Origin: Podarcis melisellensis
Taxonomy: Eukaryota
Assembly: GCA_964234715.1 (NCBI GenBank)
Contig: OZ174282.1
DNA length: 64,000 bases
Reading direction: 5' to 3' (one strand)
The translations under genes and the position numbers were made by a program. Below are positions 6,736-62,290 of this stretch, piece after piece. Each line of letters begins with the position of its first letter. Position 1 is the first letter of the stretch. The notes below the pieces were generated by a model. That model was not told the DNA's origin, ran no database searches, and worked only from the letters and a program-made list of their open reading frames with translations.

Positions 6736-7305
6736 ATCAGCCTCAGATTTTGTGACTTAGCCTCAAGAGAGTGTCAGATGCTGATTCACCTCTAGTTCCA
6801 AAATATGCCAGAAAACAGAGAGGCGGCTTGCAGCCTCACCCCAAGGATGTAGGCCACTTATACACCAGCAATAAAAAAGAGAGGGTGATAGATAATTTGC
6901 ACATGATGATTTTTATATATAGATGCAAATTCATAAATAATTGCTAGACGTCAAAAGAAATACATACATGTTACCACCGTGGGGAAGAAGGCTGTGGTCA
7001 GGGGCCCTGTGTGACTGCTCAGCCTATTGTCCAGGAGCTGCTCACTACTGCTGGCTGGAAACTTCCAGCCTTCACCCCTGCTCTCCTTTCTTGTGACTCT
7101 TTATCTTTAAACCAGGCTTGGACTGGGCATGCCATCAAAAAGAGAACTATCCTCTGCAAAGTAGGAGAGCTGCTCCCCCCACCGTCACTAGGCTTGCTTG
7201 GAAGTCAGCTCCAAAATTCCAGTGGAATTCACTTCCAGGGATGCAATCATGCGTAGTGACACCAGAAGGAGGGAGATAGATACTGAACTTCAGCTTCCTC
7301 TAAAC

Positions 7306-7441
7306 CAGGGTTTCCCAAACTTGGCCCTCCAGCTGTTTTTGGACTACAATTCCCATCCTTCCTGACCACTGGTCCTGCTAGCTAGGGATGAAAGGAGTTG
7401 TAATCCCCAAACAGCTGGAGACCCCAGTTTGGGAAACCCTG
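7306..7441. mobile_element. Non-autonomous hAT (Charlie/MER5-like) palindromic MITE
   Basis: 16-bp perfect TIR CAGGGTTTCCCAAACT / AGTTTGGGAAACCCTG; perfect 8-bp TSD CTCTAAAC at 7298-7305 and 7442-7449; near-palindromic body. Confidence 0.95.
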
Positions 7442-8264
7442 CTCTAAACCTTCCTATTAACTAGCTTGCCTTAGCAAAAAGCACAGTACCTTGGGGTCAG
7501 AAATGGTTTTACTGAGACAAATAGCAGGCTTCATGGCACTTCTGTGCCAGTCCAATGATGATGCTCTGGAAACACTTTTGGTTTCGATGGTGGCAGAGTT
7601 GGCAACAAGTGGTGTAAGAGCTTTGGAGTGGAAGGACACAAAGTTCAGAGAGGAAGGAGGGTGTTGCTTTTGACACTTCCTAGTGGGATTTGGGGTTAGG
7701 CCTGGAGCAACAAGTGCCGTGGAAGGTGAAGGCCAGGAAGACCTTCCAGCATAGCCAGAGAGAAAAAGAGTCTTGGAAGAGGGTTTGGGATGCTGAGAGG
7801 CTCCAGACAGAAAGACAGAATGCAGATGGCTGCATTCAGAAAAGAATTAATGAGTAGGTGTCTTCTACGACTGTGATAATTACCAATTTTCTGTATTTAT
7901 GAAAATGTCATAAATATTGAAGTGTGGCACTATTATCTCTATAGATACTGATTTAGCATGAATATGGAAATTTGTTAATTATCGCTAAAGCTGTTCATTA
8001 AATTCTGAAAGTTTTTTTTAATTAAAAAAAAACAGCAAATAAGTATGTCATTTACTCATTGCTTCATTGCTTCAAACCAGACATTTCCATATTGACCTGC
8101 TTTGTTTGTTTGTTCCTTTCATGATGCAGGTAGAAGAGATTCACTCCAAAGAAAAGGTTCTCTCTTGCTGCACAAGCAGAATTATGCAGTTGCCCTGATC
8201 CAGCAAAGGAAACCCATGCACAGAAATAGGATTCAGCGCTGTGCGTTCAGAAGGAGAAGGACAG

Positions 8265-9995: not shown

Positions 9996-10509
9996 CAGGG
10001 GCGGAGGAGGGGGGCAGTCCGCCCTGGGTGTCATCACTGAGGGGGGTGACATTTGGCGCTCCGCCCGCTCGTGACTCCCAAACGTACCCCGAGCCATCGG
10101 GGGAAGGGGCAGAGCTGCACTGCCTTGCCAGTGGCCTTCCCCCCTTCCCCCTTTGTTTTGACAGCTCGAGGGAGGCTTGGGAGTCGCACCGTTGACCCAA
10201 GCTCCCGGGCTGCTTCCTGCGGGAGGGAAGCCTCCCCTGAGCTGTCAAAAGGAAGAGGGAAGGGAGGAAGGCTGCTGGCAAAGCGGTGCAGCTCTCTCTC
10301 TCTCCCCCCCCACCACCACCCAGGAAGCAGCCCACCATGGGGGTGGCTCGCTCCACCCCCCATGGGCAGCTCGTTCCACCCCCATGGGCATTTTGCTCCC
10401 AGGATGCTCGTTCTGTCCCCTGGGATGCTTGCCCCGCCCCCATGGCCCCGCCCCTGGGTGCACAGCATGTGTGACGCTCCGGGTGCTAGAGTAGCTAGCT
10501 CCGCCTCTG
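9996..10509. mobile_element. GC-rich non-autonomous hAT-type element
   Basis: TIRs CAGGGGCGGAG / CTCCGCCTCTG (10/11 match); 8-bp TSD CCCACCGC (9988-9995) / CCGACCGC (10510-10517); long internal inverted repeat. Confidence 0.85.
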
Positions 10510-11282: not shown

Positions 11283-14200
11283 TAGATCCCAGCCTTGCCT
11301 ACCATGTAAGCGTCCATGCCTCTCGTGAAAGAGGGACCATTTTGAATCAAATTCTGTGGCTTTTCGGGAAATGGTTGGTTCTAGACAGCAATGTCCCTAC
11401 GTTTCGTTAAGGAGAAAATTCATGGTAGGGGAAGTGTAATTCACAAAAAGAGATTAACAGAAGACAACGGTGGGCATGTCAACCAGAGCGTGGCAGGGCT
11501 CACACCTTCACAGCAGAGGCTGTAGGAGAGGGTGGCTTGAGCAGGACAATGACTGGGAAGGGCAGGAAGGATGGGGGCTGCCCCCAAATGCAGAAGCAAA
11601 CCCGCTTCCTCCCAGTTTGTGCTGTATCAAAACAACTGGGATCCACTTTGAGCCTTCCAGAGAAGGTGGGTGTGAAATAATCGAATGGTCACGCAGAGCA
11701 CCCACTCAGCTCTTCCACCATCACTGCTTTTGCAGTTGTGGCAACCAGTTTCTAATGGCCATCTAATAATAATAAAATATAATTTACACAGATCGCTATA
11801 AAGAGTGGGTCATTCTGAGGTTTTAAGTGGAGTCACAAAATCTGGGAAGCTGCATATTGAAACAAGATAAATAAAACCCCAGGTGGATCCCCTCTTTCTA
11901 TGGCACAGAACTGGTCCTTGAGCTGTGCACAGCTAGTGCTAGTCCCAGGCTATCAGGAGGTACTTACAGTTCAACGACCCTTCAGGAGCTCTTTGGGGGC
12001 TGCTCCAGAATGGCCAGCAAAGGAGTCCTACAACACTCCTGTACCATGTCTCTAAACTCAAACTGCCTGTGCACTTGAATGCCAGCATTTCAATATCAAA
12101 GGCTCAGGTCCCTTGGTCAATGCTGGGGATTACAAGCTTTATGAAAAATCAACATGCAGATTGATTTTTGGTCAGATAATGTTTTGCCATGTTTTGAACC
12201 CAAGGATGATAAAGGCATAAACTGTTCAATTTCTCCCAGATGCAAAATTTACCCAATGTAGCAGAAGCTTTTTGTGCACCTGAAAGTCAAAATAGCTTCT
12301 GACAAAAGTTAGGATGGAGAGCAAGCCATGAATGCCTGAGGATTCTACCTGACAGAGAGTTTAGAAGAACCAAAATGAAACCTCCAGCAGCCAGGTGAGA
12401 TACCTCTCCTGGGAGATGCGAGATCCTGAACAGGGCAGAAGGCCCAACCACCCGGCCACTCTGTGCCTCTTATCTCTTCCTTTCATTGCTTTAATCTAGC
12501 CTGCAGGTCCATGCTGAACAAACCCCAACAAGATGCTGTGCATACTCTTCTGAGACTCCTTTGCAGGCAACAACCCCCAGCCTTTAGTGTGCTGTTGCAG
12601 TCCCAGCAACAACACCCAAAAGAGAGAAGGACGTTTTGTGCTGCTCAAGAGTGTCCGTTTAAGCCTTCTTGGTCTCACGCGGCAGAGAGGCAGGATGTGC
12701 AAAGAGTTAAACAGCTCACATTTCCATTACACTTTGCCACTGGGCACAACGAATTTGATGTAATTAAGAACCATTTAGGAGGCAAAGTGTGAATGGATCC
12801 AACTGCACTTCTGAATTTTTAAACGGATCCTAAGTGGGAGACAGTGGCCGGCTGCAGCCTCTCTCCGGAACACAAAGAGCTGCTCCTCTGCCGTGCTGAG
12901 TGGAGCCCTCGGAGCAAAGGTAGGGGATGGGGGAAGCAGATTACAAAATTCAGTCACATTTGAAAATTTTCTGCTACAATAATTCACTTTATGTAGAATT
13001 AATGTGGCTGATTGAACGTTTGTGCTGCAATTTACTTATAATTAACATTTTATGGTGAACAGATTTCACCATCGCCTTCATGCTGGGAACTCCGAGCCAT
13101 AGGTCAAAAACAGAGATGAAACAGAGAAGCACAAAATATTCTCACTGAAATATTAATGAGATTTTAATTTACTGCTTTAAAAATACATCTTTCATCAACG
13201 TCTGTATATCAAATCATTATTTCAATTTCCCCCCTCAAATCACATTAAAACTATAATGAACTTTTCTGGCCTTTGAAAAGCTCTGAGGGAGAGACATTTG
13301 TTTTGAAGGAACATCCCTGGGGAGGAGCGCCAAAGCACCCCCCTCCAGCCCATGGCTCTCTGGCTGACCAGGACCATTTACTGCCCGACTCTTGGCCCAC
13401 TGGCTTCTGCAGCCATTGCTGCACTCTGGAAAGGAAGGTAAAGTGAGGGTCAGTCAAGAGGCTCACCCAAGATCCCCTTCTCCTTACTGAAAGCCAGGGC
13501 CCCAGGGACTGAAGGGAAACTCCAGCTGGCCAGCCCTACATATTCACTTACTGGTTTTATTTCCCATTGCTTTGAGATGTTTCTCAGGAATGGGGGTGGG
13601 AGAAGCAGGGGGGGGAATCTAGGCTGCTTTTCAAAATAAGGATTTCCCCCCAAGCAACACACAACATTAAAAGCAAAATTATTAAAACAAAATGTAAATT
13701 CAAAAGGCAGCATACAAACATTTGAACCTTAACAAGTAAACCATTCCAAATTCAAAGCCACCCAAATCCACAGTCTTCAACAGCAACAGCTAGCAGCCTT
13801 TGCAACAGCCTCAGGTGCTGGATTGCCACTGCTCAAGTAAAAAAGCAGTGTTTTAAGGTGTATTTGTGAAGATATCCTGCTAAGGTTGCCATATGTTCTC
13901 TTTTTCCAGGACACGTCCTCTTTTTCATGAGCAGAGTTGTCATAGCAATCCATAGTTTAAAAGTAGAAATCAGCAAATGTGTCCTTTTTTTTTTTTTTTG
14001 CTCTTCAAAATATGGCGACCCTATCAGCTGAATGCTGAAGAGAAGGGCACAGTGAATTTCTGCCTGCCACACTGCTGTTGAAGGTAAAAGAGCCTTGCTC
14101 TCCTCCACTGCCAACTCTTAAACCATACCAGTGGGTTTCTTGAGCTTCAGAACCAGTTATGTTCCTGTAGCTATTGCATCCATTGATCTTAGGCTGGCAA

Positions 14201-15651
14201 TATGACATTCAGCGCTAGACCAGGTCTGGTATTTCAGATGGCAGAGGCGGGGGTGGAGGGGTCAAAAGAGATTGAAGAATTACAGCAGTCAAGGCTCAGA
14301 TGCTGCCCGAGCTTGCATAAATTCAAGATTAAATTGTTAAAAAGCATTCTAAGAGCATTTGCTTCGGTTATTTATTTAAATCTCATAATAATAAGTACAA
14401 CAATGTCATCAGCCCAGGTCAAGCAGGCGCCCTTTGATTTTACTTTTTTAGCAAAAAGGATTTGATGCTTTGACATTAATGTATATACCAGAACAATCCA
14501 TCCCCAAGAATTTCCCTAACCTACCCTCCTGAAAGCAATTAATCCCCCTCCCATGTTGCTGCTACAATCAACTGATCAGCATCTACATCTGTATTTCCCT
14601 TAAAAAAAACCCAACACACCAAGAGCCTGAATAACAACACTAGTCTACACTGCAGGGTTGTCATGCACTACTCTTTCTCAATCCTCCCGTCACCCCCACT
14701 TTAGCAATATTAGTATAGCAACTCTGAGCTATTTTGCATGGCTGATGTAATCCATGCTTTCTCAACCATAATATCCTCCGTGCAATATGGATATACTAAT
14801 CATGGATTTTATTTGTATTTCCATTTGCAGGGTGTCACATGAAATTAATCCTGTGCTACGAAGAGCATGAAGTCCTGTCCTCATTGCACCCTTTTGGTTT
14901 GGCTGGACATGCCGCTGCCTGGTCACTGCTACACTAAAATCCTGGATTTCCAAATTATTATCTCTGATCAACAATTACTTGTCTGTTACAGAAGAAGAAA
15001 GCATCAAAAAGACTCAGCCATTCCTTTATCTGTTGTTTTGAATCTAGCAAAAAAAAAAAAGTTTGAGCCACAGAGCTTCAAAATGACCCAGGAAGTCCCT
15101 TCTCCATTGTGTGCAGAAGGGGTTTCCTGGGTCACGCTGGAGCTGCTTTGTGCTCTTCTCTGATGTGTGGGTCACTCTGCATTTATCTGTAGCACTTGCC
15201 AATCACAGCGGTGATCACTCACAGCCTACAAACACTGAAAAGTGGGAACAGGCTCATATTTCATGAGGCTTTTGGGGGTGGGGAATAGTGCCTGCACAGC
15301 TTGCTTCATAACATTTGTTCTACAAGGGCTAGAAATTTACTTTTAAAAAAAGAAAAGAAAGCTCAGAGTCTGCTCTCCTGCTGGCTCTGGGCTCGGTCCC
15401 TCCTTCTCTGGTTGGGTGCTGCAGGAAACAGAGAAAGTGTCCTTCTCTTGAGTCAGGCCATTAGGTCATCTAGATCAGCACTGTCAACACTGACTGGCAG
15501 CAGCTCTCCAAGTTTCAAGTTAGAGGAAATTCCCAGTCCTATCTGGAGGTGCCATTGTTTCTCCACTTCTAATTTTATTATTTTCAGAAGCATATAATAA
15601 TATAATAATATAATAATATAAACCTTTGTATATTGGTGGCGGTGCAATTGT

Positions 15652-15705
15652 GGATTGAACCAGGGGCCTTCTGCATGCTGAGCAAAGGTTTGACCATTTA
15701 GCTAC
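15652..15705 (-). mobile_element. tRNA-derived SINE head fragment
   Basis: GGATTGAACCAGGGGCCTTCTGCATG...GACCATTTAGCTAC is the reverse complement of the SINE head seen at about 1230-1280. Confidence 0.6.
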
Positions 15706-15717
15706 AATGCGCCTTCC

Positions 15718-15763
15718 TATGAACAGGATGCTAGACTAGGTTGGCCTTTGGTCTGATCCAGCC
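15718..15763 (+). mobile_element. CR1-type LINE 3' UTR fragment
   Basis: GAACAGGATGCTAGACTAGGTTGGCCTTTGGTCTGATCCAGC, the sense version of the 8265 and 24880 remnants. Confidence 0.5.
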
Positions 15764-15938
15764 CTAAGGCGCTCCCGCCCATATCACATCAAAAACATTC
15801 ACCGACATTTCTGCCTCAGAGTTGTAGGCTCTTAAGTTCAGTCACCACTAGCAAGGAGTGCGGCTGGCTATGCAGAAGAGGATATTACCATTATCATACA
15901 TACGAACTGGGGAGGAAATAAGATGGTAACAATAAGAA

Positions 15939-15944
<6 letters not shown>

Positions 15945-15986
<42 letters not shown>
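15945..15986. repeat. (AG)n microsatellite
   Basis: Perfect run read directly. Confidence 0.98.
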
Positions 15987-15991
<5 letters not shown>

Positions 15992-16319
15992 AAGAGAGAA
16001 AGAAATCAAAGCAACCTTTCCTTGTTTCTCTCGTAATAATCTGGTTTTTGCTGCAAAGATTGCAAGAACAGCCCCCTCACACACCATCCCCTACCAATCC
16101 CAGGCCTCGCTTTGAGTTCATTCTGTGCATTTACACATTCTGAAAGAAAGAAAGGAAGGAAAACCTAATGAATATACTCAAAACAACAACCTTGTCTGTG
16201 TTCAAAAGGCCCTGGATTTTGCTCCAAAGTTGCTGTTCCATAGTAGAAAGATAGAAACATCCCTGGGAATTATTACTAATTTTTAAACAGCACTAAAGAA
16301 TTAAAGCACAAGAGAAAAA

Positions 16320-16480
16320 NNNNNNNNNNNNNNNNNNNNNNNNNNNNNNNNNNNNNNNNNNNNNNNNNNNNNNNNNNNNNNNNNNNNNNNNNNNNNNNNN
16401 NNNNNNNNNNNNNNNNNNNNNNNNNNNNNNNNNNNNNNNNNNNNNNNNNNNNNNNNNNNNNNNNNNNNNNNNNNNNNNNN
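16320..16480. other. Assembly gap (161 N)
   Basis: Run of N. Confidence 1.
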
Positions 16481-18039
16481 GGAGGGAAAATGGGTTGGGG
16501 GGGCATTTCAGCTTAAAAGGAGACTTTATTCATTCCTGATCAGCTTCTCCTTCTATTCTCTCTTTTATTCTTAGATATCTTTTTTTTTTTTTAAGGCGGC
16601 CCTTCAGATGTTACACATCCAACCCTGTGAATCCCACCTCTGGGCAGTGAGGGTGGAATTCAGCATCCAATCGGCTCTTTCTACAGCCCTGAAAAACCAA
16701 TTTGCTCATAAAGATTTTTTTTTTTAAGGGAGAAGCACAACAAGAGGGGGCTGGAGTTGCTCTTGGAGGAGAGCTTCAATTTCACTGTAATTGTCAGAAG
16801 AAGGGCTGCTTTGATCTACAGAATCATGATTATCTTTCAAATGTCTGTGCATTAATGCAGCAGCTGCACTTTGGCAGGAGGGCATCAAGAGGGTGTTGCA
16901 GGATAACCTCCGGCTTTGGCCCTGCTTAGCTCCCCCCACAAGCCTCCCTCTTCACTCTTCCCCCCACCCCACTTATTATTTCCAAGGCCACTTAGCAAGA
17001 TGCCCCACAAGCAGCAGCGGCAGATGTAAAGCTCTTCATCACCAGCCTTGGTGTTTCCAAGAGGGTCCCACCAAAGGTTTGGGAAGGAGCTCTCCAGGCA
17101 ACACAAGAAATGCTCTTGCCTGTCAAGCCCCCATCCCTGCCCCCAGTCCCAACCCAGGCAAAGGCAACTGTGAGGAGACTTGAATGTTGGGTGAAGGCTC
17201 ATCTTCTGATCTTCATATTTACGTTCTCCATCCTGCATTATCCAAACAGAAGAATTTTCTTCTCTTTGTGTTGCATGCTGTTGCTACAATCTTCAAACCC
17301 AGTTCTGGAAATCACGATCCACAGCATGATCTGGTTGGGAAGATGGAGCCTAGGAGAGGCCCTCATCTGTGCACCTGCAGCTGCCAGGTGGCAAGACTAA
17401 GGGCCCGGTTACACCCTATGGGGACACTGGATGGCTGCCAGAGACCCGCCTCCCCAAAGAATTACTGGGCAAAAGACACAGGTGCCACTGTATTCCATGA
17501 TCTCACCACCACCACCACCATTCCAGTTCACTGACTGCCACTGACTGGAGGAGACAGTGCACTGGATGCATGGATCCATGCCACATGTTTCTTTTACCAA
17601 ATGCTACTGAGGGGACACAGCTTGGTGGGAGCTGCGTCCCCCTCCCACACACATGAAGCCCACCCTAAATCACTGGAAGATAAGCAGTCACTTTCATTTA
17701 TCTGATGCATTTTTTTTGGGCCCTCAACCCCAACACTACATTACTCCTTGATTCCCTGATTCCATTTCTCTGCTGCCCATCCAAGGCTTAAGGCTCCTTA
17801 TAGCAGCTACTGACTGTTTTGTTTTTGTGAGAAGTGGGGCATCTGCAAAGGGGAAGAGGAAGACTTGCTTGGGAAAGCCAGTAGGCCCACCAACCTCACT
17901 TTCCCACCTGCCCGTGCTCCCCACCTAACCTTATGCTAATTAGCCATGCAGCCCCACCAAGAGCAAAGTTGCCTGCCACATCCCCCTCCCTCACCATGAT
18001 TTATGTTCAATTTGTACAAATGGAGAAAATGAGATTTCT

Positions 18040-18370
18040 GATTTCAATGCCATTTCTGCAATGAAGTGATTAAAAGAGAGAGAGAGAGAAGGAGAGAGAG
18101 TAGGGGAGAGGGAGGCACTGCGTTCGACTGTATAGAATATTGATCCCGGCGCTATTTTCCTTTGCAATAACCATTAGCCCTGTATTATTTGCAAACCTCT
18201 AATGTGAACCCGGGGATGTAATTTACATTTCTGCTTTCCTTATTTGCCTTAACAAAACAACAACAAAAAGCTTTGGGCCTTTCAATCTATCCACATTGTC
18301 AATAAAATCAGCAGCTGATAGGAATTTGTGCATATGCTAAACTGTCATCTCCATGTAAACGACAGAGGGT
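18040..18370. promoter_or_regulatory. Candidate conserved non-coding element
   Basis: High-complexity AT-rich block with retained CpGs and homeodomain/SOX/E-box-like words (CATTGTCAATAAAA, CAGCAGCTGATA). Conservation is inferred, not shown. Confidence 0.4.
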
Positions 18371-18503
18371 AAAGTGAGGAGCAGAGGGGACTAGGAAGGC
18401 TTCAGATTGCCTATACTTGGCACAGGTCTCCTCCGGTGTCCATCCTATACCTGTTATTTGCTCTCCCCTCCCTGGCAGCACAGTCCTGGCTCCTGGAAGC
18501 AAT

Positions 18504-19000
18504 GCACAGAAAGCCATGCAGGCAATAGGCCTGGATGTGGCCTGGGGAATATAGCCACATAACAAACTCAGGGCGCTTCCAGATTTTTGAGTAGGATTCA
18601 GCCACAAACTGGCAAATGAAGGCTGCACAGTTAAAGTGAGAAAATGCACTGGGATAATATATCCTCCAAATGTCCTGATTTTCCAGGGACAGTCCTGGAA
18701 TTACAGAAGCCGCCCAGTTTCTGATTTGATCCTGGACTGTCCCACTTTTCCAATAGGACGTCCCTATTTTCATCGGAGAAATGTCAGAAGAGATGGAGGA
18801 TGACATCCCTCTTTTCATCAGAGAAATGTTGAAGGGTATGGGATAACACTTGCTTTGATGCAACATCATCTAACCACCCCTCAAACAAACTGGAAAGAAT
18901 GCTCACTGAATGGCCAGCATCATCTAATCTGCCTGCAAATGAGTCGAGATGGATCCTTAGTAAAGAGGTTGTCTCAAAGTGGCATCTCACACCATTTTAC
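18504..19000. mobile_element. Ancient interspersed repeat, copy 1 (possibly MER121-like), interrupted by a MITE
   Basis: Collinear same-strand similarity to 61899-62290 on both sides of the 18658-18840 insertion, e.g. ACTTGCTTTGATGCAACATCATCTAA and CCTGCAAATGA[G/A]TCG. Confidence 0.7.
18658..18840. mobile_element. TIR-bounded non-autonomous DNA element, short form
   Basis: Ends TATATCCTCCAA / TTGAAGGGTATG; flanking duplication GGATAA (18652-18657, 18841-18846); internal direct repeat TCCCTnTTTTCATCnGAGAAATGT; homologous to 26522-26922. Confidence 0.8.
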
Positions 19001-19041
19001 AGCCAGCCATTTCATCACTCCAGATCCTGGAGGGGGCACAT

Positions 19042-19160
19042 CAGGGGCACCTAAGCTGTGACCCTCCAAATGGTCCTGGACTACAGGTTCCATCACCCCA
19101 AAATGTGGGTGATGTTCACTGCAGTTCAGCAACATCTGGAGGGCTGCAGATTAGCCACAG
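19042..19160. mobile_element. Degraded hAT-type palindromic MITE
   Basis: CAGGGG start and CCCTCCAAATG...GGACTACA...CATCTGGAGGG fold-back; same architecture as 7306-7441. Confidence 0.55.
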
Positions 19161-21199
19161 GGACACTTTGCAGAGGGTTGCAACTGCAGCCAATAAACTA
19201 CAGCGAAAGAAGGTGTTTCAAATGTGCTCTAAAGGTATAGTGTGTACACTGAAACAGGCACATTGTAGGGTAGATGATGCCCCTTGTTATGTGATGGGTG
19301 GCCAGTGTGACTGAGCTGTGCCCCTCCCTACAAAGGTCCAGCTCTTTGTTAATGGGCTTTAGGTTACGATGGTGGACCTATTCCAGTTCATAAGCACCCA
19401 GCCAGCCATCAAAGAGGCAACAGGCAGTAAAAAAGCCCAAAGAGGTGTGTGTGTGTGGAATGGAGAGGTACTAGAAACAGAAAGGCAGGTGTGGGGACAG
19501 GACAAGCAAGGTAGCTCTTGCCCTTCAGCAAGGAGGGATGCAACACTCTTGCCTCTGAATCAGGAGGACTTTGTCAGGGTGGGGAAAACAGTCATGCAAA
19601 GGTCCAAATCCACCTGGGACTCTCATGCAGAGATTGCTGGAAAAGCCCTTACTGAGCTAATTGCACAAGGAGTTTGTAACGCAGGTACACACACCTGCGC
19701 CACACACACCAGTCCAAGGAGAATCAAGATGGGGAGGCAGGGTTGGAGTCCTGAGAAGTTGTCAGACATCATGTTGCCACTTGGGTACCAGCTCTGGACA
19801 AAGGAGATGAGGAAGTTTCTAGGCATCCCCAAAAACAAGGAGAAGGAAAGCAGGAGAGGGAGCCCAGCCCAGCTAATGACCCTTAATTGCCACAAGCAGC
19901 ATGGCACTGAGGCCAGGCGGCTGCTTTGCATTCTTGGGATGTAGGGTATGCAAATGCCTCCCAAGGGCTGACACAGTTTCTCTATTGTGGATCCTGAGGG
20001 TAACAAAATTAGCCTTTGGCAGCCATGGTAATTGGGAGGTGCGGTTCCCATTAGGAGTCCTACAAATTATGAAGAAAAATGGACCAGGGGCTTTGTCGCA
20101 AATAATAATAGCAAGAAGAAAAGAGCGGGCGCCTGCCTCTGTTTCCCCCCCCCCCACGCCAAATCTCTCTCTTTATTTCTAGATGGTGCAGTTAATGCCT
20201 CCTTGTTTAGTAACAAGAAAATAGTCTGCAGTCCCCTGCTGGACTTTTCCAAGGCAAGATCACATGGTGGATAATATAAAATCCAATCTGAAGATGGAGT
20301 TGCAGCAGAGCCAAAGTGCCAGTGGCTGATCCAGACAATGTTCTTGTCCCTGCTTCGCCCCCGCCTTTGTTGTGAGTAAGGACTGAGACCTGCAACAACA
20401 TGGAAGGATGTGCTTCCTGGTCCCTGAAGGGCTAGACATCTTTGAACAGTCCCAACCCATGACTTCTTCTTTCCCCTGCTGCAAATGGGGGGTCCTAGCC
20501 TGCTCCCAAATGTGCCTGCCCGGGATGAAGGTCTCAGCCGCTGAGAACTTGAAATGCTCTGCCAACATCTTCAATGGCTGCTGACCCTCTCACAGTGCAG
20601 ATACTGCAAGTCAGAAAATGAGTGGCCTCTTTGATCTCCCTGCCAGGAGACCAAATGTCACATTCAAGAAGCCCCAGCCGCCCCCCCCCCCAAGTTTACA
20701 CCTGAGACTGTCTTCCTCCCGAGTTCCGAGGGTTTTCCATACTACTGGGTCGGGGTAGTAGAGAACGTGAGAAGTTTCACATACATAGTGCAGCAGGCCA
20801 CCTGCTCTGCAACTATGCTGTGTTTCCTTTTGCAAGAAAACTGCAAGATGTGCCCAAGGTTCACTCAGGTTTGTGGATGAAGCTAACAGGAACAGAGGAA
20901 GTGAGGCAGATGTCCAAGGAAGGCCTCCCTCCTTCCTTCTGAAGTGCACGAGGCCATTGCCAGTCACATCAGGACCCAGCCAGAGGGCTCTGGAATTTGG
21001 CTGAGCCAAAGTTCCCTTGTTGCATGGTGTCCAGAGAAAGGCCTGAAGCCAGATGATTGGGTCTGTGCCTGCACAGTATCAGCACTGGGTGGGGGGTAGT
21101 TTTGGGGGATGCCATGAATGCAGCTCTGAGCCAGCAATAAAAGGGGAAATGAGGGATTTGGGAATATTGAACTGTTGCAGTCACATTTGTGCTTTGAAC

Positions 21200-23900: not shown

Positions 23901-24302
23901 CGTTTCTCTCAAGCCCAACCGACTGCTGGGAGGACTCAACAGCCACCAACTGCAGAGATGGCGGCCTACTCTCCTCTGGCCTCTTCGGCCTACCTGCTAG
24001 AGTCAGGGATTCTTCAGCAGTCATTGCCACTAGGAATGGTTGACCTAGATTCTTTTGCTGGACAAGGACTCCTCTGAGGTCCTGGGCCTGCCATGATTGA
24101 TTTCAGCTCCCCACTGCTCTGCTCACACCTTCCTCCCACAAACAGCAGCAAACCAGGCCTTAGCTGATACTCCTACTCTATCCCATAAATGCTTTGCAGC
24201 TGCATACCCTCCAACATGCCACAGAGGAAAATCCGGCTGTATGTCTTTTGGGGCTGCATGCCGTGTGAGTCACGTGACTCCCATAAGAACACAGCTCCGA
24301 AA

Positions 24303-24373
24303 AACTTACATCTTTTCAGAGCCAGATAACTCATGTGAGAGCATAACTTACATCTTTTCAGATCCAGATAACT
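24303..24373. repeat. 29-bp direct repeat, period 42
   Basis: AACTTACATCTTTTCAGA[G/T]CCAGATAACT at 24303 and 24345. Confidence 0.95.
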
Positions 24374-24878
24374 GGGGGGCCCCAAAAACGAGTGTCTTTG
24401 GGGGCTGAGATCTTGTGGAAGCCAAACAGGACATTCTGGGATCCAATCAGAAGCTGGGATGGCTTCCGTAATTCTGCGATGTCTCGCTTCAAGTGGGACA
24501 GTCGTGGGGAATGGCAGCTGACAGGGCTGGAACACCCAGCTGGACAGGTTTGCAGTCTTGGTAGCAAATGGCAGCAGGGAAAATGTTTTCTAATGCAGGT
24601 TTCCCCTTGGGGGAGCTGGGGGGGGGGGAGCTGCAACATTCCTTTGGGAATTTTTGTAGCCACAGCCATCTGTATTCATTCAGCTACTTGACAGCCCACA
24701 AATCCTGCTCCTGTACAAGAGGAAACGAAGGAGTTCCGATGCTGTACTTCATTTTAAAACTGGGCAGAGCTTGCTAAAAACTCTGGCCTAAACAGATCTG
24801 CAGACAGACAGATTCACCTTTTGATGATGCTGTGAACTGCCGACAGTGGTTGTCTACGCAGCATCTCAGTTCTGCTCC

Positions 24879-26521: not shown

Positions 26522-26818
26522 CAGACCCTCCAAGTGTCCCTATTTTCCAGGGAGTTCTGGATTTACAGAAGCCATTCTGATTTGACCCTGGAATGTCCTA
26601 CTTTTCCTTAGGATGTCCCTATTTTCATCTGAGAAATGTTGGAGGCTATGGAGTTCTGTGACCCTCAAGTCACAAAGATGGAACTATACAAGCTTTAGTA
26701 GACATCTGAAGGCAGCTCTGTACAAGGAAGTTTTTAATGCTTAATGTTTTATTATGTTTTTATATATGTTACAAGCTGCCCAGAGTGCCTGGGGTATCCC
26801 AGTCAGATGGGCTGGGGA

Positions 26819-26865
<47 letters not shown>

Positions 26866-26922
26866 AGTAATAGAATAGAATAGAACATCCCTATTTTCAT
26901 TGGAGAAATGTTGGAGGGTATG
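26522..26922. mobile_element. Composite TIR element carrying an internal L2-type 3' tail
   Basis: Ends CAGACCCTCCAA / TTGGAGGGTATG; ~36-bp direct repeat at ~26616 and ~26888; between them lies an L2-like tail (AAGCTGCCCAGAGTGCCTGGGG...CAGATGGGC) with (TAA)n at 26821-26863. Confidence 0.85.
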
Positions 26923-27324
26923 GGTTCTGGCTGAATGCAGGGGCTCTGGCTTGGCTCTGTGGCCACACAGCTCCTATGTTGCTTCAGCAGGGAACAAACT
27001 GAACCTCACCCAGCCCTATGTGGCTGCAGCAGAACAGCTGTCTCCTAACCACAAGCCTGGCAGGCACTGGAAAGTTCTGCTTTGCTTAAAGGGCCCAGCC
27101 CTCTCCATTAGTCTCTTGCTGCAATGGAGTGGAGTCTCCGGTTGCAACGAGTCCTGCATGGAGCCTTCCAAGCCTGAGAATGGCATCCTCTGGCTGCAGG
27201 GTGAGGAGGAGGACACTGGCCCTGCAGGCTCCTCAGGTAGGAATGCTTCAGAGGGTGCCTACATACCCTTCCCCTTCTGCTTCAGAGTCTTACACTTCAT
27301 CACCTGAAGAGCACTCCCTCTCTT

Positions 27325-31366: not shown

Positions 31367-31525
31367 NNNNNNNNNNNNNNNNNNNNNNNNNNNNNNNNNN
31401 NNNNNNNNNNNNNNNNNNNNNNNNNNNNNNNNNNNNNNNNNNNNNNNNNNNNNNNNNNNNNNNNNNNNNNNNNNNNNNNNNNNNNNNNNNNNNNNNNNNN
31501 NNNNNNNNNNNNNNNNNNNNNNNNN
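31367..31525. other. Assembly gap (159 N)
   Basis: Run of N. Confidence 1.

Positions 31526-35094: not shown

Positions 35095-35160
<66 letters not shown>
35095..35160. repeat. (CT)33 microsatellite
   Basis: Perfect run read directly. Confidence 0.98.
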
Positions 35161-35165
<5 letters not shown>

Positions 35166-35278
35166 CCCCCCCCCCCACATAACAGTGGTTGTCCATTCCC
35201 ATCCTCCAGCCCACTCCAACTCCCCAAAATCAAGCATACATTTACAACTTTTGTTTCCCAATGTTTGGGGCGCCATGC

Positions 35279-35337: not shown

Positions 35338-38179
35338 TGAAAAGCGACAGCCACTCTAGAAGCTGGCATTTCTGCAGGCCTGTAATGTGCCCTGGGGTGC
35401 TGCTTTGTCTCTTTGGGCATTCAGCCCCTCTACTCTTTGCACTTAGAAAGTCTTGTCTCTAACAAGCCTCAAGAACGTGAGAATGAGGGCCTGAAACTGC
35501 CTGTCACCAAAACTTCAGAAAAAGTCCTTATGTTGGCTGGCTCAATCCAAGCCCTGAATCTGAGTCTGCTGGCCTGGTCTTCCTGTAGTGACTACAGGGC
35601 CAGACTCAATAAAATGTGGGCCACACAGAACATGTACATATCTCACACCTATGCAGTCAGTGTGCACACATGGCTGAATCACCTGCCCATAAAGCACACA
35701 AACATGTAGAAGGGCACATCTAAACCACGGCCGGCAGCAGCACCTCCATGAAGGATGGGCTTCAGAGATGAAAGAGACTTGTCTCACGCACGTCAGGCAA
35801 AGGCTGCCATTTTGAACAGCACTTTCCCTTCCATCAGAAGAAACACCCCAAAGACCAGACTTCTTTCCCACCAAAGGGCACGTCCGCCTCCTGTCCGCCC
35901 CTCCCTCCTGCCCCACTTGAGGGCATGAACCAGCCGTGCGGAAGGAGTGGGGAGGGCAGCTGCTGCCCCATCTCACCTACGTCCTGTCAGCCTATGGACA
36001 GGCATTTCCACACAGCCTCTCTTATTTACGCACACGTGCAACGCGTCTAGGAGGAGAGAGCGCCTATCTCTGTGGTTATGCCTGCTTGTCTCCAGGATGA
36101 AAAAAAATACACAGCACAGTTACTCAAACACATGTAAATATCGCTCTAATCCCATTTGTTTGGCAGACCATATAAAGGCTAAGAAATGAAAAATGCACTC
36201 ACACGCCCTCTGACACCCTGGCCCAGCGCATGGAGGGGAGCGCTCTCCCAGTGGCTGGCTCCTGGCTCCCTCGCCTCCCTCGCGCTTTGCTGCTAAGAAG
36301 ATACTTAGAGCGCAGGGATTGCTCACAATCTGGCTGTGTGATCCACATACATGAGTTGTAATATGCCTGCTCCTATTTCGCTGCCTCTCCCTCTGCCTCT
36401 CTCCCCCCCCCCCGCCAGCCCATCTCTCTTGTTCTCATGTTCAGTGGTTATTTTAGCTTAATGCAATGACATCACACGGCTCCCTTCATTAGGCAGAGCC
36501 CTCGCCGTGCTGCGCGGCTCCCCTGATCACTTCCAAATGATGAGATTTAGGGAGGTTGGATATTTATTGCCGATCAGTCTTAACGTGGGACGCTCAGCTC
36601 CAGGGTGGCGGGGTGTGTGTGTTGGTGTGTCAATTTCTCTGCCCAAGGTGTACACAAGGGGGGGGGTTGCACAGCGCGGGTGACAGCTGTGTTGTGGCTG
36701 TTTGTGTAAGCTGGCGGGGGGTGGGGAGAGAGAAGGCGAGAAAGTGAAAGGGGGGCTTTATTACACATTTTCATTTTTATACAGCAGGCTCGAATAGCTA
36801 TAGGTATCTGCCCATAGCTCAAGCCTTTAATCGGTGGAGTTTTTATATCAAGTCTGAATGAGGAAACTCCAGTAGGCCCTGGGAGGGGATGGCGGGTGCA
36901 GGGGGGAGAAACCTCGCTTTTCAGCATCGCATAACAGCATCACAAAGCATCAGTATTAAAATGTGCACAATATATTATTTGCTTTGATAATTGCAATAAT
37001 AATATTTTTTAAAGTAGTTGTGGTGGTGGTGGTTGTTATTAATTGTTAAGCTGCTGCTGCTGCTGCTGCTACTAATACTAGTAGCAACAACAACACCCAT
37101 TTTTCTTTTTATTTCCTGCACACACCCTTTTATGTTTTATCTTCTACCTTCTGGGCTTTTGGATATCTCCATCATTTTATCAAAAGCGGCAAATGCTAAA
37201 GGACCAGCAAAGGCCAAGCAGTGGTTCAGCAGGAATGCTGAGGAGGAGGGAGAGAGATGTCATCAAATGAGCTTCCCATTATTATGGGCTGTGGTGGACT
37301 GGCTGGGTTCCTGGGACGCCAGAGAGCCCTGAAACCCTAAATAATCAGGTTGCCAAGAAGGCTAGCCTGGGGAGGGCGAGGTTCAAAGTCTGCTCCTGGA
37401 AAGACAGACAAACGCCGGCGTTTCTCCTGCAAAAGGCTATGGCTTCATTCAAGTATTTTCCTTCAAAATCAGGCCAGCACAAATCCCCGCCTGCAGAATA
37501 TATACTCTGTGCCCTCCCTCGATGGGCTAGGTAATCCCTTGAATTAAGATTTCTTCTTTTTCCTGAGGGTTTTTATTTAACTGTTCTTAATAAATGAGAG
37601 CATTTAGGCACGTTTTGTTCTGCAGCCCTTGCTGGGACCAAAATTGCTACATTTGCTGAAACGCCGTTCCAGATGGCGTGTCCCCCACCCAGCTCCCTCC
37701 CCAAAAGGGCTTTTCTGCTTCTGCTTCTGGCTGCCTCTCTTTCGCTGCTGCTTGGCTGGGACGGAGGGGCAGCCGCTGCGGGACCTGGACAGCTCCCTCG
37801 CAGAGCCACAAAGCCAGGCAGGAGGAGGCCTGGCTGGCTGGCTGGCTGGCTGTCGCAATGGAGCCCCTCCATACATTTGTAGCAGCAGCAGCGGCAGTCT
37901 CTGGACTTGAACCCCCTGCCCTCTCACCTCAGGGTCTGATATGACTCCTCTCTCTCTCTTCCCCCACAACTCCCTGCCCCCACTCTCTTTTCTTCCGGCT
38001 CCTCTATCAAGCAGTGATGTACTCAGGCTGGCTGTGAATAAATGTAAGTGACCCCCACCCAGCCACCCCCACTTCCCTGAGCCTTCTGCAACTGCTGGAG
38101 AGGGAGAGAGAGAGAATGAGAAAAAGAGAGAGGAGGAATGAGAGAGAAGAAAGTGAGGGAGAGAGAGAGCAAGCAAATG

Positions 38180-38900
38180 GCCCCGACTTCCTCCCAGGTA
38201 ATTAAAGGGTCTGTTTTCAAGGTTGCGTGGGTAAAAGACAATTTGGCCTAATGAAGCATTGATCGGCCAGCACTAAAGGTAGAAAAAGAGATGCTGACTC
38301 TCATCCATTCAAAGGTACCTTTCACTGCTGTAAAGCAGAGAACCGGGGATTGTTCTGGCTCAGCTGTCATTGCCTATGACCTGCTTTAGGGGGGGAAAGA
38401 TGAGAATTTGCTTTAAATTTATTTCGATTCTGTAATGGCGCCGAGGTATATTATATGTCAGGCTGGGTACGATTATTAATCAGTGGGAAATTATATTTGC
38501 ACGTGTGCGTGTGTGTGCTCTTCTCTCCACCCCCTTCCCCTTTTCTTCCCCCTTTTCTGCTTCTACCGAATATTGCGTCCTTCATTATTCACATTAAGAC
38601 CCCCACCAATCAGCTCTTCGGATGCTGAATGCGTGAGGTCAGTTATGGAGATGCAGGAAATTACTGCGGATTGGTGGGGACATTTTTGTCAATTTGTAAG
38701 CAAAAGCCGGCGTTATTGCAAGGTTTTCATCACTGTCGATTTGTGCCGGTACAAGATATCTCAAAACAAAACCCTCCAAGGCACTGATGGCGGACGAGGC
38801 AAAATATCTGAGCAGAAATCTTTAGGCGCCGATATTAATGTTCCGGCAATCAGAGAGAGGAAGTGTGTAATTTTTCCACTTGAGACCAATCCAGTTCTAA
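38180..38900. promoter_or_regulatory. Long candidate conserved non-coding element
   Basis: About 700 bp, repeat-free, moderately AT-rich yet with many CpGs and TAAT/TGTCA/ATTGAT words; no credible reading frame. Confidence 0.5.
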
Positions 38901-39928: not shown

Positions 39929-40100
39929 NNNNNNNNNNNNNNNNNNNNNNNNNNNNNNNNNNNNNNNNNNNNNNNNNNNNNNNNNNNNNNNNNNNNNNNN
40001 NNNNNNNNNNNNNNNNNNNNNNNNNNNNNNNNNNNNNNNNNNNNNNNNNNNNNNNNNNNNNNNNNNNNNNNNNNNNNNNNNNNNNNNNNNNNNNNNNNNN
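39929..40100. other. Assembly gap (172 N)
   Basis: Run of N. Confidence 1.
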
Positions 40101-51558: not shown

Positions 51559-51671
51559 GAGGCGGCCCTGTTTAGGAAAGTTTTTAATGTCTGATGCTGT
51601 ATTGTTTTTAATATTTGTTTGGAAGCCGCCCAGAGTGGCTGGGGAAACACAGCCAGATGGGCGGGGTATAA

Positions 51672-51721
<50 letters not shown>
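51559..51721 (+). mobile_element. L2-clade LINE 3' end with (TTA)n tail
   Basis: GGAAGCCGCCCAGAGTGGCTGGGGAAACACAGCCAGATGGGCGGGGTATAAAT stem-loop followed by (TTA)n; typical lizard L2 tail. Confidence 0.85.
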
Positions 51722-54008: not shown

Positions 54009-55952
54009 TCCACAAAAAGCTTATTATTGGCTGCACCCCATCGGATTGATTATTCCTGAACCCTGAACCAAACTGGCTTGTGTGCTATCTTGAAGTCCCA
54101 CAAGTCGGGGCAAGGCTCCCAGATTATGCACCCCTCCCAGTCCCTTGCAGCCTTGGAGTCCCACTGGGCACTCCTCTTGCACTTCTAACAGCTGCAATGG
54201 CACATGCCATGAACTGGATTTCTCCAACGAGGTACCCAGAGGAGCTTGCATGCCGGCCAGCCACCCAGGATGAGTGGAGGAGTGGCCTCGGGAGCATGCA
54301 GATGGGCAGGCTCCCAGCTACTCCAAGCCAGAGTGGAGAGGTGCAATTTTTGCGCCCCTCCTGGGCCTTGCTCTTGGCAGGGGCCAGCCTGACCAACCAC
54401 CAACCCCTGGCTGGGGGCTGACCCATACAACTCCCTTGGCCCCTTTCTTGAGACAATGAGACTGACCTACCCTACCTCCCCTTATTGTCTATTTGTGGTT
54501 TCAACAGCTGTCAAATGGCTTAAGGCGGCACATCGCTCTTGAGCACTGTTTTGGTTTATTTGCAAGGATGAGGGACGGGTTTTTATTCAAACCGGGGCGG
54601 ACTGTGAATGGTTCTCTACATAGTAAAGTCAACTTGGAAGAGCTTGACTGGGTAAAAAAAAAGGACTGAGGCTGTTTCCCTACTAAGGCATCCATGGGTA
54701 GCTGTTTTTGTCTCTGTACTTGTGTGTCTTAGTCCACACACTTTCAATTTTATTCCTCCAAAATCTGTATTGATGTTTCCCGTCCACAGGAGTGGGCGCC
54801 GCTTGATGAGATGTAGTCTTGCTGCTTTCTGCCCCCCCCCCATCCACCGTAAATTCCAGTAAGCTGAGGTCTGTTGTGGGCATGCATGCAAGTGTTTGTT
54901 TATCTATGCATGCAAACCTTTAAAAATAATAAATGGTTCAAAATAAAAGTTTTTCAGTCTACTAGATTTGCACAAAAGAAAAGTGAATAATAACAAAAAT
55001 ATTTGTGCTTCAGAAACCTGAGGTCCATTACGGGCAGGCAAGCAGGCATTTGTTTACCTGTGCATGCACACCTTTTTTTAAAAAATTAAAACCAGTTTTT
55101 TATATATACCAGATTATATATGTGTGTTAGAGAGAGAGAGATTCCAAGCCAGTCAAGGTTTTGGAATTGCTTACATGAAAGGCTGCTGCTTCCTTTCCTG
55201 CCTATTTCCCTTCTCACTTCCTGTACCTGCAAGGACACACTTTATTTTTATTTTGAATACAGCTGCCTTGTGCAAGAGCAATTTTGTGCAGAACTGCTTT
55301 TAAAATTGGCACACTGCAAATGTGGCTTCAGCAACGAACAGCGGAAAAAACCTTTTTGGCTGCTGGAAACAAAATGGAAATAGGAGTTGTGGCAGTAGAC
55401 GGCACCCAGTGAAACCCTGCCACACACAGGGGGAGGGGGATCATCCACACAATGCACTCCACAATCAGGTAACATGCAGTTTTATATTGGATTTTCTTCC
55501 TTTATCAGATCAAAAAAACAATGCATTTCATGGGGGCTGAGGAGAATGCCACAAAAAATAAACACACAAGTAGCTCCAAATCCACATTAAACTCCAGTGT
55601 GGATGAGCTGCAAGTTGTTTATATTGGCTGAGTCCTGCAGCTTGGGATTCAAAGTGGGTGAAACAACCAGCAAATGTTGGTCGGGGAAAAGGTCTCTCCT
55701 TTGGTTCTACGACCAAAATTCCCAGCTGAAACTCCTCTACAATGTAGCTATACAATGAGCATGTCAGAGGTTCATGCCACACTGAAGCAGCGGTGCAGGC
55801 GCCACTGTAACAAGTGGCCAAACCTTGGGGAGCAGCAGGGCGAGCCCTCCAAACTGAACCCCCAGAATCCAGAGGCTCAAGTCAGAAGGAAAAGCAAAAT
55901 GTCCACTCAAAGCCATCCAAATTGTGAAGTGAGGGTGGGGATTGTTCAGCCA

Positions 55953-56020
55953 AGAGAGGGAGGGAGGGAGAGAGGGAGGGAGGGAGGGAGGGAGGGAGGG
56001 AGGGAGGGAGGGAGAGAGGG
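55953..56020. repeat. (GGGA)n purine microsatellite
   Basis: Read directly. Confidence 0.97.
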
Positions 56021-56845
56021 CAATAGAGAGGCTCCTGTTTGACATTCCTGCAGGCCTATTTATTAGTGGTGAAATACAAACCATGTTATCAAGAATCTCG
56101 AGGAAATGGATTGATGTTAAGTGATACTTCAGAATCCACCCCCTAGCAAAGCTGCTACACCATTGCAGGCAGATAAGTGGAAAATCCTTCCTGCAGACGG
56201 CGGAGATGCTGTAAAGCCTTTGGATGCATTTCTGCGGCAAAATACCAAGCAGCCTTGGGTACCTTGGGGGGTTGGGGAGGAGACAAAGTACATGAAGACT
56301 GCAGAGGAATGTTACGAAATCAAGCTAATAATCTTGAAATGTCATAACATGGTGTTCAAAGTCACTCTCGATGTTATGAATCTCTGCCTTTTACGGAACA
56401 CTCATTGCTCTTGAATGGACCTCCTACAGAAGTGAGGGGTTCAAGAAGAATGATATTCGCTTGATTCATAATCCAGCGGCAACACAGGTGCAACCTAGAG
56501 CTCCTCCCTGGCATAAGCAGGTGATGTTTTTGGGTCCAAAAAGGAGGTCCATGAGCTTGCAACACAAAGAACCATTGGAGTTGCTAGGGTGGCCTTTGGC
56601 AAAACCACACCTGCATCATAGCCTTGGAGGTATCTGTTCTCTGCAGTGGGACCTCTGCTAACAGCGGCAACCTGGCTGGCCTAGGCCCCTTCTTTCGGCT
56701 GCCTTCCAGATAGTTGGGCTGCTGTTCATCCCCCCTGCTGAGAAGCCACCCCCCCATGTCACAGCCCTGATCCATGTGACACCTGGGAGGAAGCCCTGGA
56801 AACAGAGCTCCCCACAGTGGGCAGGAAGCACAAGCACCCCCAAGC

Positions 56846-57088
56846 CAGGGGTAGGCAGTCTAAGGCCCGGGGGCCGGATGCGGCCCAATCATCTTCTCAA
56901 TCTGGCCCACAGATGATCCAGGAATCAGTGTGTTTTTACATGAGTAGAATGTGTGCTTTTATTTAAAATGCATCTCTAGGTTATTTGTGGGGCCAGGAAT
57001 TTGTTCATATTTTTTTCAAAATATAGTCCACCACATGGTCAGAGGGATGGTGGACCGGCCCATGGCTGAAAAAGGTTGCTGACCCCTG
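56846..57088. mobile_element. Non-autonomous hAT-Charlie MITE (MER30-like ends)
   Basis: TIRs CAGGGGTAGGCA / TGCTGACCCCTG with subterminal GGCCC/GGGCC motifs; 8-bp TSD CCCCAAGC (56838-56845) / CCCTAAGC (57089-57096). Confidence 0.9.
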
Positions 57089-61898: not shown

Positions 61899-62290
61899 TG
61901 CACAGTAGCCATTTGCATTAATGCAGCCCAGGCTGGACCAACGGAATTGTCCTCCTTGATGAGGACAATCCAGTCCATCCAGACTGTCACTGTTTTCAGG
62001 TGCGATTCAACCACATACTGGCAAATTCAGATTGCGTTATTACAGTTGGTCAGGAAGTCTTGTGCAAGAAATCAGCCTCCCCAAAGATCAGACTTTTAAG
62101 GAGGAAAATGAAAAGCAAACTGGAAAATGCAGGAATAAAACTTGCTTTGATGCAACATCATCTAATCTCCCCACAAATGAAAGAGAAGCAACAAATTAAA
62201 TAGCCAGCCTCATTTAATCTCCCTGCAAATGAATCGGGATGAACACTCAGTAAACAGGTTGTCTGGAAGTGAAATCAAACAACAATTTAC
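61899..62290. mobile_element. Ancient interspersed repeat, copy 2 (possibly MER121-like)
   Basis: Collinear with 18504-19000. The core GGAAAATGCAGGAATAAAACTTGCTTTGATGCAACATCATCTAATC...GGGATGAACACTCAGTAAA resembles my recollection of MER121. Confidence 0.7.

What the first reader, a model, noticed from the sequence alone, without database searches (positions are those of the whole stretch)
18504..19000. Two diverged copies of a ~400-bp ancient element 43 kb apart (copy 1, split by a MITE)
Seen: GATTCAGCCACAAACTGGCAAAT (~18595) pairs with GATTCAACCACATACTGGCAAAT (~62004). GAAAATGCA..GGATAA|CACTTGCTTTGATGCAACATCATCTAA pairs with GAAAATGCAGGAATAAAACTTGCTTTGATGCAACATCATCTAA, and similarity continues to ~19000/~62290. 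Homology spans the MITE at 18658-18840, so the MITE is younger; copy 1 also lacks about 75 bp present in copy 2. Identity is patchy, with near-invariant cores. Known: ancient low-copy repeats such as MER121, UCON and Eulor are often exapted as enhancers near developmental genes. Inference: two copies in one locus could be a redundant, TE-derived enhancer pair, with the MITE as a natural perturbation. The MER121 label is from memory only.
Basis: partly seen in the sequence, partly recalled or inferred. Interest (0 to 1): 0.7.

Follow-up and report, generated by a model that had tools for sequence, protein, structure and literature searches.

The report
Old two-copy lizard repeat, MITE-split
Two decayed copies of a roughly 300-base non-coding stretch really do sit 43 kb apart in this wall-lizard DNA, one later split by a small mobile element, but nothing testable here shows they are an ancient conserved repeat or a pair of gene switches.

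Summary
Copy 1 (18578-18657 plus 18847-19000) and copy 2 (61978-62290) are homologous in the same orientation. The right block is 78% identical over 159 nt (blastn E about 1e-30) and the left block 78% over 49 nt. A 181-nt MITE (18658-18838) with a perfect 8-bp target-site duplication, TGGGATAA, splits copy 1, and copy 2 keeps the empty site. Copy 1 lacks about 75-83 nt that copy 2 has.

Corrections: the element is about 300 nt, not 400, and homology starts near 18578, not 18504. Both copies share an internal 55-nt tandem duplication.

There is no third copy in the window, no collinear homology in the flanks, and no terminal inverted repeats or target duplication at the element's ends. There is no RNA-structure or Rfam signal. 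The pair's divergence (K2P 0.26) lies inside the range of ordinary decayed repeats in the same window (0.15-0.34). The "invariant cores" are only nominally non-random (P about 0.03).

The MER121/UCON/Eulor label, the genome-wide copy number and orthology in other amniotes could not be tested. Most likely these are ordinary old repeat relics. This scan has already filed similar two-copy cases in this genome. Interest is low.

The parts
18578..18657 (+). Copy 1, left part of the element, up to the MITE insertion site. Its last 8 nt are the target site TGGGATAA.
   Evidence: Local alignment to 61978-62131. blastn 18585-18637 vs 61993-62046, 72% over 54 columns. nhmmer E 4.5e-17.
18658..18838 (+). 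A 181-nt non-coding MITE inserted into copy 1. It is flanked by a perfect 8-bp target-site duplication, TGGGATAA (18650-18657 and 18839-18846), and has imperfect terminal inverted repeats.
   Evidence: Target duplication, inverted ends and the empty site in copy 2 were checked. Family members lie at 26527-26925 and 24203-24474.
18847..19000 (+). Copy 1, right part of the element. It holds the perfect 26-nt run 18848-18873 and the two internal ~55-nt units a (18856-18910) and b (18911-18965).
   Evidence: blastn 18840-19000 vs 62132-62290, 77% over 161 columns, E 4e-32. 78% over 159 aligned nt, one 2-nt gap. Unit alignment.
61978..62290 (+). Copy 2, uninterrupted, same orientation as copy 1. 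Secure homology runs 61993-62290. Internal units are a (62148-62200) and b (62201-62255).
62048..62122 (+). Segment present only in copy 2, absent from copy 1. Whether it is a deletion in copy 1 or an insertion in copy 2 is not resolved.
   Evidence: Gapped alignments. No significant match elsewhere in the window.
26527..26925 (+). Second copy of the MITE family, itself interrupted by a SINE-like insertion at about 26654-26880.
   Evidence: blastn 82% over 136 nt and 90% over 40 nt to the MITE in copy 1. Sequence read.
24203..24474 (-). Third, more decayed relative of the MITE family on the opposite strand.
   Evidence: blastn hits to both MITE ends in reverse orientation. Sequence read.
19051..19154 (.). 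Short palindromic element with the same CCCTCCAAATG end motif as the MITE. It lies 50 nt beyond the right end of copy 1.
   Evidence: Inverted repeat I1 with 48-nt arms, 73% complementary, and shared words D4 and D7.

Best explanation
The two stretches are relics of one old, non-coding, dispersed repeat. Most likely they are two copies or fragments of a mid-aged interspersed (transposon-derived) family of the lizard lineage, and they have been decaying without detectable constraint.

The ancestral element already carried an internal ~55-nt tandem duplication. After the two copies separated, copy 1 was hit by a hAT-like MITE that made an 8-bp target duplication. One of the two copies also gained or lost about 75-83 nt.

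Shown here: the homology, its sharp limits, the order of events, and the lack of RNA structure. Inferred: the transposon origin and the neutrality.
For: - **Homology far beyond chance, with sharp ends.** E is about 1e-30. No collinear similarity appears in 6-9 kb of flanks searched with 7-nt words.
- **No third copy** in the 64-kb window, even with a profile HMM.
- **Ordinary divergence.** K2P is 0.26 for the right block and 0.27 for the left. That falls among the plainly mobile repeats of the same window: MITE pair 0.15, SINE-like pair 0.29, palindromic elements 0.23-0.34.
- **Old internal duplication.** Units a and b are 59-66% alike within and across copies, while a1/a2 are 71% and b1/b2 80% alike. 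The internal duplication therefore predates the split, as expected for a family consensus.
- **Tolerated disruption.** Copy 1 carries the 181-nt MITE, differs from copy 2 by the ~75-nt indel, and has a second small MITE 50 nt from its end.
- **No RNA signal.** Rfam gives no match at gathering score and only one chance-level hit at E 0.86. Folding z-scores are +1.1 and -0.9.
Against: - Genome-wide copy number is unknown, so 'family' is an inference.
- The element shows no terminal inverted repeats, no target-site duplication, no poly-A or microsatellite tail and no tRNA-like head at the limits defined by the two copies. No transposon class can be named.
- The window is otherwise very repeat-poor, with only three dispersed pairs. 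Two independent insertions of one family in 64 kb need either a fairly abundant family or a local copying event.
- The mismatches in the right block are mildly clustered (P about 0.03), whereas five control repeat pairs are not (P 0.19-0.96).
- The right block has only one small indel in 159 nt.
Confidence: 0.5

Rival explanations
1. This is a local, non-transposon duplication. A roughly 300-nt piece of unique sequence was copied once within the locus, by repair-mediated or template-switch copying, and the two copies have since drifted. The genome would then hold only these two copies.
For: - The window is repeat-poor, with just three dispersed pairs.
- The two copies are in direct orientation in one locus.
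- No transposon hallmarks appear at the ends.
- Earlier notes of this scan describe comparable old two-copy duplications in this genome.
Against: Homology stops abruptly with no extended flanking similarity. A 43-kb jump of only 300 nt is an unusual size and distance for segmental duplication. Nothing tests it directly.
Confidence: 0.3
2. The two copies would belong to an ancient, low-copy, amniote-wide repeat of the MER121/UCON/Eulor kind, kept by selection as a redundant (shadow) enhancer pair flanking a regulatory block.
For: - Mismatches are mildly clustered around a perfect 26-nt run, 18848-18873 = 62140-62165 (P about 0.03), while control repeats show none.
- There is only one indel in the 159-nt right block.
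- The shared CpG in unit b is kept in both copies (alignment).
- The window looks like a conserved-element-rich, transposon-poor locus with three masked stretches.
- MER121-type repeats are reported near developmental genes (PMC2689173, citing Lowe et al.).
Against: - Divergence is no lower than that of ordinary repeats in the window.
- Copy 1 carries a 181-nt insertion in its middle and differs from copy 2 by a ~75-83-nt indel.
- The element has no hAT-type ends, although MER121 is classed as non-autonomous hAT (PMC5753468).
- Neither copy is masked, while three other stretches of the window are.
- Exact scans for both cores in the metagenome collection found nothing, which is weak evidence.
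- The perfect run was the reason the pair was noticed, so its P value is inflated by selection.
Confidence: 0.1
3. The copies are two paralogous genes or exons for a structured non-coding RNA.
For: None beyond the paired conservation. RNAalifold draws 22 pairs with one compensatory change.
Against: - No Rfam family at gathering score. The only hit at E up to 1 is snoR127 at 17.8 bits against a threshold of 37.
- Single-sequence folding is no better than shuffles on either strand, with z of +1.11 and -0.93.
- The consensus energy is only -10.6 kcal/mol over 161 columns.
Confidence: 0.02

Closest known systems
Decayed copies of an unclassified interspersed repeat (the kind that Repbase/Dfam hold as 'Unknown' families)
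   Same: Short, non-coding, sharply bounded and dispersed copies with about 20-25% pairwise divergence. They share an internal tandem duplication, differ by large indels, and carry nested younger insertions.
   Different: Only two copies are known, and no ends diagnostic of any transposon class were found. Family status is inferred, not shown.
MER121 (mammalian conserved repeat; classed as non-autonomous hAT in Repbase per PMC5753468; 865 blocks analysed in PMC2689173)
   Same: A non-coding element a few hundred nt long, lying in what looks like a conserved-element-rich locus.
   Different: No sequence comparison with the MER121 consensus was possible. The element has no hAT-type inverted ends or 8-bp target duplication at its limits.
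UCON / Eulor families (ultraconserved-element-derived and euteleostome conserved low-frequency repeats; PMC5753468)
   Same: Possibly low copy number, and a location among conserved non-coding DNA.
   Different: These families are defined by conservation across distant vertebrates. Here none was shown, neither copy is masked, and exact-core scans found nothing.
Shadow (redundant) enhancer pairs and duplicated conserved non-coding elements (own knowledge: Hong, Hendrix and Levine 2008; McEwen et al. 2006)
   Same: Two related non-coding modules in one locus, with short shared blocks.
   Different: No activity, chromatin or cross-species conservation data exist. The block pattern is barely beyond chance, and one copy is structurally disrupted.
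hAT-like MITEs of lacertid lizards (for the inserted element only)
   Same: 181 nt, non-coding, a perfect 8-bp target duplication, imperfect inverted ends, and several relatives in the window.
   Different: The terminal motif (TA..CCCTCCAA) is not the usual hAT end. The superfamily rests on the length of the target duplication alone.

Membership tests
MER121 | Significant sequence similarity to the MER121 consensus | not testable with these tools
   No Dfam/Repbase library or mammalian sequence was on hand. No consensus is printed in the papers read.
MER121 | Non-autonomous hAT structure: terminal inverted repeats and an 8-bp target duplication (class as given in PMC5753468) | tested here: not met
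   No inverted repeats link the two ends of either copy, and no direct repeat flanks them (flanks read). Caveat: both copies could be truncated fragments.
MER121 | Hundreds of copies, kept with low substitution rates across mammals (PMC2689173) | not testable with these tools
UCON / Eulor | Orthologous copies conserved across distant vertebrates (PMC5753468) | tested here: inconclusive
   Exact scans for a 25-nt and a 26-nt core in metagenome contigs gave 0 hits. Neither copy is masked, unlike three other stretches. Both results are weak and indirect.
Interspersed repeat (transposon-derived family) | Multiple dispersed copies with unrelated flanks | tested here: inconclusive
   Two copies have unrelated flanks, and there is no third copy in the window. 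The genome-wide count is not available.
Segmental / tandem duplication | Collinear homology extending into the flanks | tested here: not met
   Only the element itself aligns between 12000-21000 and 55300-64000. Other hits have E above 0.03 and are not collinear.
MITE, hAT-like (the insertion 18658-18838) | Short and non-coding, with terminal inverted repeats, an 8-bp target-site duplication, an empty homologous site, and several copies | tested here: met
   - 181 nt long.
- Target duplication TGGGATAA is 8/8.
- The ends align as inverted repeats over about 20 nt with mismatches.
- Copy 2 shows the empty site.
- Relatives lie at 26527-26925 and 24203-24474.

The hAT assignment rests on the length of the target duplication only.
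Structured non-coding RNA | An Rfam match, or a fold more stable than shuffles with covariation | tested here: not met
   Rfam gave nothing at gathering score and one chance-level hit. Fold z-scores are +1.11 and -0.93. One compensatory pair out of 22.
Shadow / redundant enhancer pair | Both copies drive overlapping expression, with open chromatin and cross-species constraint | not testable with these tools
   No expression, chromatin or comparative data were reachable. The only related measurement is mismatch clustering at P about 0.03.

The most novel reading that the evidence does not exclude
The two copies are a selectively maintained pair of cis-regulatory modules derived from an old low-copy repeat. 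They would sit in direct orientation on either side of a transposon-poor, conserved-element-rich regulatory core (about 29-47 kb of the window), with the shared 26-nt core as a retained binding platform. That core includes a TGATGCAAC word resembling a C/EBP-ATF site, a resemblance that rests on memory only. The MITE in copy 1 would then be a natural spacing perturbation.
Probability: 0.08. Interest if true: 0.55.

Novelty: new member of a known kind. Interest (0 to 1): 0.15.

Why it matters
**If the ordinary reading holds.** This is one more decayed dispersed repeat with a nested MITE. Its use is as a small relative-dating marker: the element split first, the MITE insertion came later. It would also be an entry for a lacertid repeat library.

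It would be a reptile example of a transposon-derived redundant enhancer pair with a natural insertion allele. That is a known phenomenon in mammals and would be moderately interesting, not surprising.

**Methodological point.** Two-copy 'patchy' similarity inside a conserved-element-rich locus is not evidence of constraint unless it is compared with ordinary repeats in the same window.

Tried and rejected
1. **Sequencing runs.** It was not tried again, so read laying could not be used. No read-depth copy count, polymorphism or expression data were obtained.
2. **Translated frames as bait.** I used translated open frames of the element to look for spurious ORFs on lizard contigs in the protein collection. 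The element gave no candidates. A control ORF spanning the clearly multi-copy MITE also gave none. The trick does not work here and the blank says nothing.
3. **Metagenome scans.** Exact scans of metagenome contigs for the 25-nt and 26-nt cores gave 0 hits. This is weak negative evidence only. No contig, human or otherwise, was fetched.
4. **Earlier findings.** A search by sequence was blank.
5. **Paper search.** A full-text search for four core strings gave 0 papers.
6. **RNA gene.** Rfam and folding were negative.
7. **tRNA-derived SINE head.** ARAGORN found no tRNA-like sequence.
8. **Tandem array.** TRF found nothing, and a unit profile finds only the two units per copy.
9. **Coding exon.** Several frames are open over 60-80 codons, but no frame is preserved between the copies. 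The window's ORFs look like noise.
10. **CTCF-like site.** By eye, the left block matches only about 10 of 15 positions and lacks the key G. Dropped.

The N runs were left untouched.

Full report
**1. The observation**

The window reads as the finding says.

- **Right block.** blastn between the two neighbourhoods gives one strong same-strand match, 18840-19000 against 62132-62290, at 77% over 161 columns with E 4e-32.
- **Left block.** A second collinear match, 18585-18637 against 61993-62046, is 72% over 54 columns.
- **Other searches.** The pair is found again when either copy is searched against the whole window, by the repeat finder (family D4), and in a whole-window self-comparison (E 2e-28).
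- **Gapped alignment.** With the insertion taken out, a gapped local alignment joins the blocks into 230 aligned positions at 80% identity. It runs from about 18578 to 19000 and from 61978 to 62290.

The homologous unit is thus about 300 nt in copy 2 and about 234 nt in copy 1. The finding's start at 18504 lies about 75 nt outside the homology, and '~400 bp' is too long.

**2. The inserted element**

- The stretch 18658-18838 (181 nt) is flanked by a perfect 8-bp direct repeat, TGGGATAA, at 18650-18657 and 18839-18846.
- Its two ends align as imperfect inverted repeats.
- Copy 2 carries the uninterrupted site (GGAATAAAACTTG against TGGGATAA|CACTTG).
- Relatives of the insertion lie at 26527-26925, itself split by a SINE-like insertion, and in reverse at 24203-24474.
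- A short palindromic element with the same CCCTCCAAATG end sits at 19051-19154.

The insertion is therefore a MITE, hAT-like by the length of its target duplication, and it arrived after the two element copies had separated. The MITE is not very young: it is 87% identical to its relative at 26527 (K2P 0.15).

**3. Anatomy of the element**

- **Indel.** Copy 1 lacks about 75-83 nt that copy 2 has at 62048-62122. Which state is ancestral cannot be told from two sequences.
- **Internal duplication.** Both copies contain the same tandem duplication of about 55 nt: units a and b at 18856-18910 and 18911-18965, and at 62148-62200 and 62201-62255. Units a and b are 59-66% alike, while a1/a2 are 71% and b1/b2 80% alike. 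The duplication therefore predates the split.
- **No larger array.** A profile of the four units finds nothing else in the window, and TRF finds no array.
- **No class hallmarks.** At the limits of homology there are no terminal inverted repeats and no flanking direct repeats. There is no tRNA-like head and no A-rich or microsatellite tail.
- **No coding signal.** No reading frame is shared between the copies.

**4. Surroundings**

- Between 12000-21000 and 55300-64000, nothing but the element aligns collinearly. This is not the visible remnant of a larger segmental duplication.
- A profile HMM built from the two copies finds no third copy on either strand in 64 kb.
- The window is repeat-poor. 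At E below 1e-6 it holds only three dispersed pairs: the MITE pair, the element, and a SINE-like pair at 26710-26863 and 51560-51713.
- It contains three runs of N, at 16320-16480, 31367-31525 and 39929-40100, which I left untouched.
Both are unchecked leads.
- Earlier notes also identify the genome as a lacertid wall lizard.

**5. Neutral or constrained?**

- **Divergence.** The right block has 17 transitions, 18 transversions and one 2-nt gap in 159 aligned nt (K2P 0.26). The left block has K2P 0.27. Control pairs from the same window that are plainly mobile DNA have K2P of 0.15 (MITE), 0.29 (SINE-like) and 0.23-0.34 (three palindromic elements). The element is thus exactly as decayed as the ordinary repeats around it. 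That fits a mid-aged, neutrally evolving repeat. It would fit an 'ancient' element only if that element were under constraint.
- **Clustering of mismatches.** The only hint of constraint is a perfect 26-nt run (18848-18873 = 62140-62165), with P 0.033 by permutation, and a windowed identity variance with P 0.037. The five control pairs give P of 0.19-0.96. This is nominal.
- **Structural disruption.** Copy 1 carries a 181-nt insertion 10 nt upstream of that core and differs from copy 2 by the ~75-nt indel.

**6. RNA**

- Rfam gives nothing at gathering thresholds for the whole window.
- It gives only a chance-level snoR127 hit, 17.8 bits against a threshold of 37, around copy 2.
- Copy 2 folds no better than shuffled sequence on either strand, with z of +1.11 and -0.93.
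- The two-sequence consensus fold is weak, at -10.6 kcal/mol with one compensatory pair.
- A structured RNA is rejected.

**7. What could not be tested**

Neither was available.

I did not try further, so there is no read-depth estimate of copy number.
- Translated-frame baits found nothing, but a MITE-spanning control also found nothing, so that route is uninformative.
- Exact scans of the metagenome collection for the two best-kept cores returned nothing. No contigs were fetched, so no human material was met.
- A look-up of earlier findings by sequence and a full-text search for the core strings were blank.

From the literature: MER121 is now classed as a non-autonomous hAT element (PMC5753468). 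It was analysed as 865 slowly evolving blocks in mammals and is reported near developmental genes (PMC2689173). The element here shows no hAT ends, but it might be a fragment.

**8. Verdict**

The most likely reading is an ordinary old dispersed repeat, either two relics of an interspersed family (about 0.5) or a small local duplication (about 0.3), with a nested hAT-like MITE. The exapted-enhancer-pair reading remains possible (about 0.1) but has only a nominal, selection-biased signal in its favour.

This scan has already followed up comparable two-copy cases elsewhere in this genome and reached the same kind of conclusion. I repeated the control comparison used in one of them, on this window. 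Interest is low.

Noticed in passing
window 16320-16480, 31367-31525, 39929-40100: Three runs of N, 161, 159 and 172 nt long, in an otherwise gap-free, repeat-poor window. They were left untouched.
   Followed up: no
window 26710-26863 and 51560-51713: A SINE-like pair, 74% identical over 156 nt and ending in trinucleotide (TAA/ATT) tails. The first copy is nested inside the MITE copy at 26527-26925, which gives a second nested-insertion chronology in the window.
   Followed up: partly
window 10099-10307, 7301-7446, 61929-61986: Small palindromic elements with arms of 80, 63 and 26 nt, 77-81% complementary. They are probably foldback MITEs. The last one abuts the left end of copy 2.
   Followed up: partly
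window 18848-18873 = 62140-62165: The perfect 26-nt run contains a small inverted repeat, TGATG-CAA-CATCA. It also contains the word TGATGCAAC, which I recall as matching the C/EBP-ATF composite site. This rests on memory only and no motif library was available.
   Followed up: no
window 15935-16003 and 35095-35172: Long GA and TC dinucleotide microsatellites on opposite strands, 19 kb apart. They dominate the inverted-repeat output and look like ordinary microsatellites.
   Followed up: no
window 37600-38200: A G+C-rich stretch with long spurious open frames on both strands. It could be a CpG island or promoter inside the transposon-poor core, but no gene could be named in the window.
   Followed up: no
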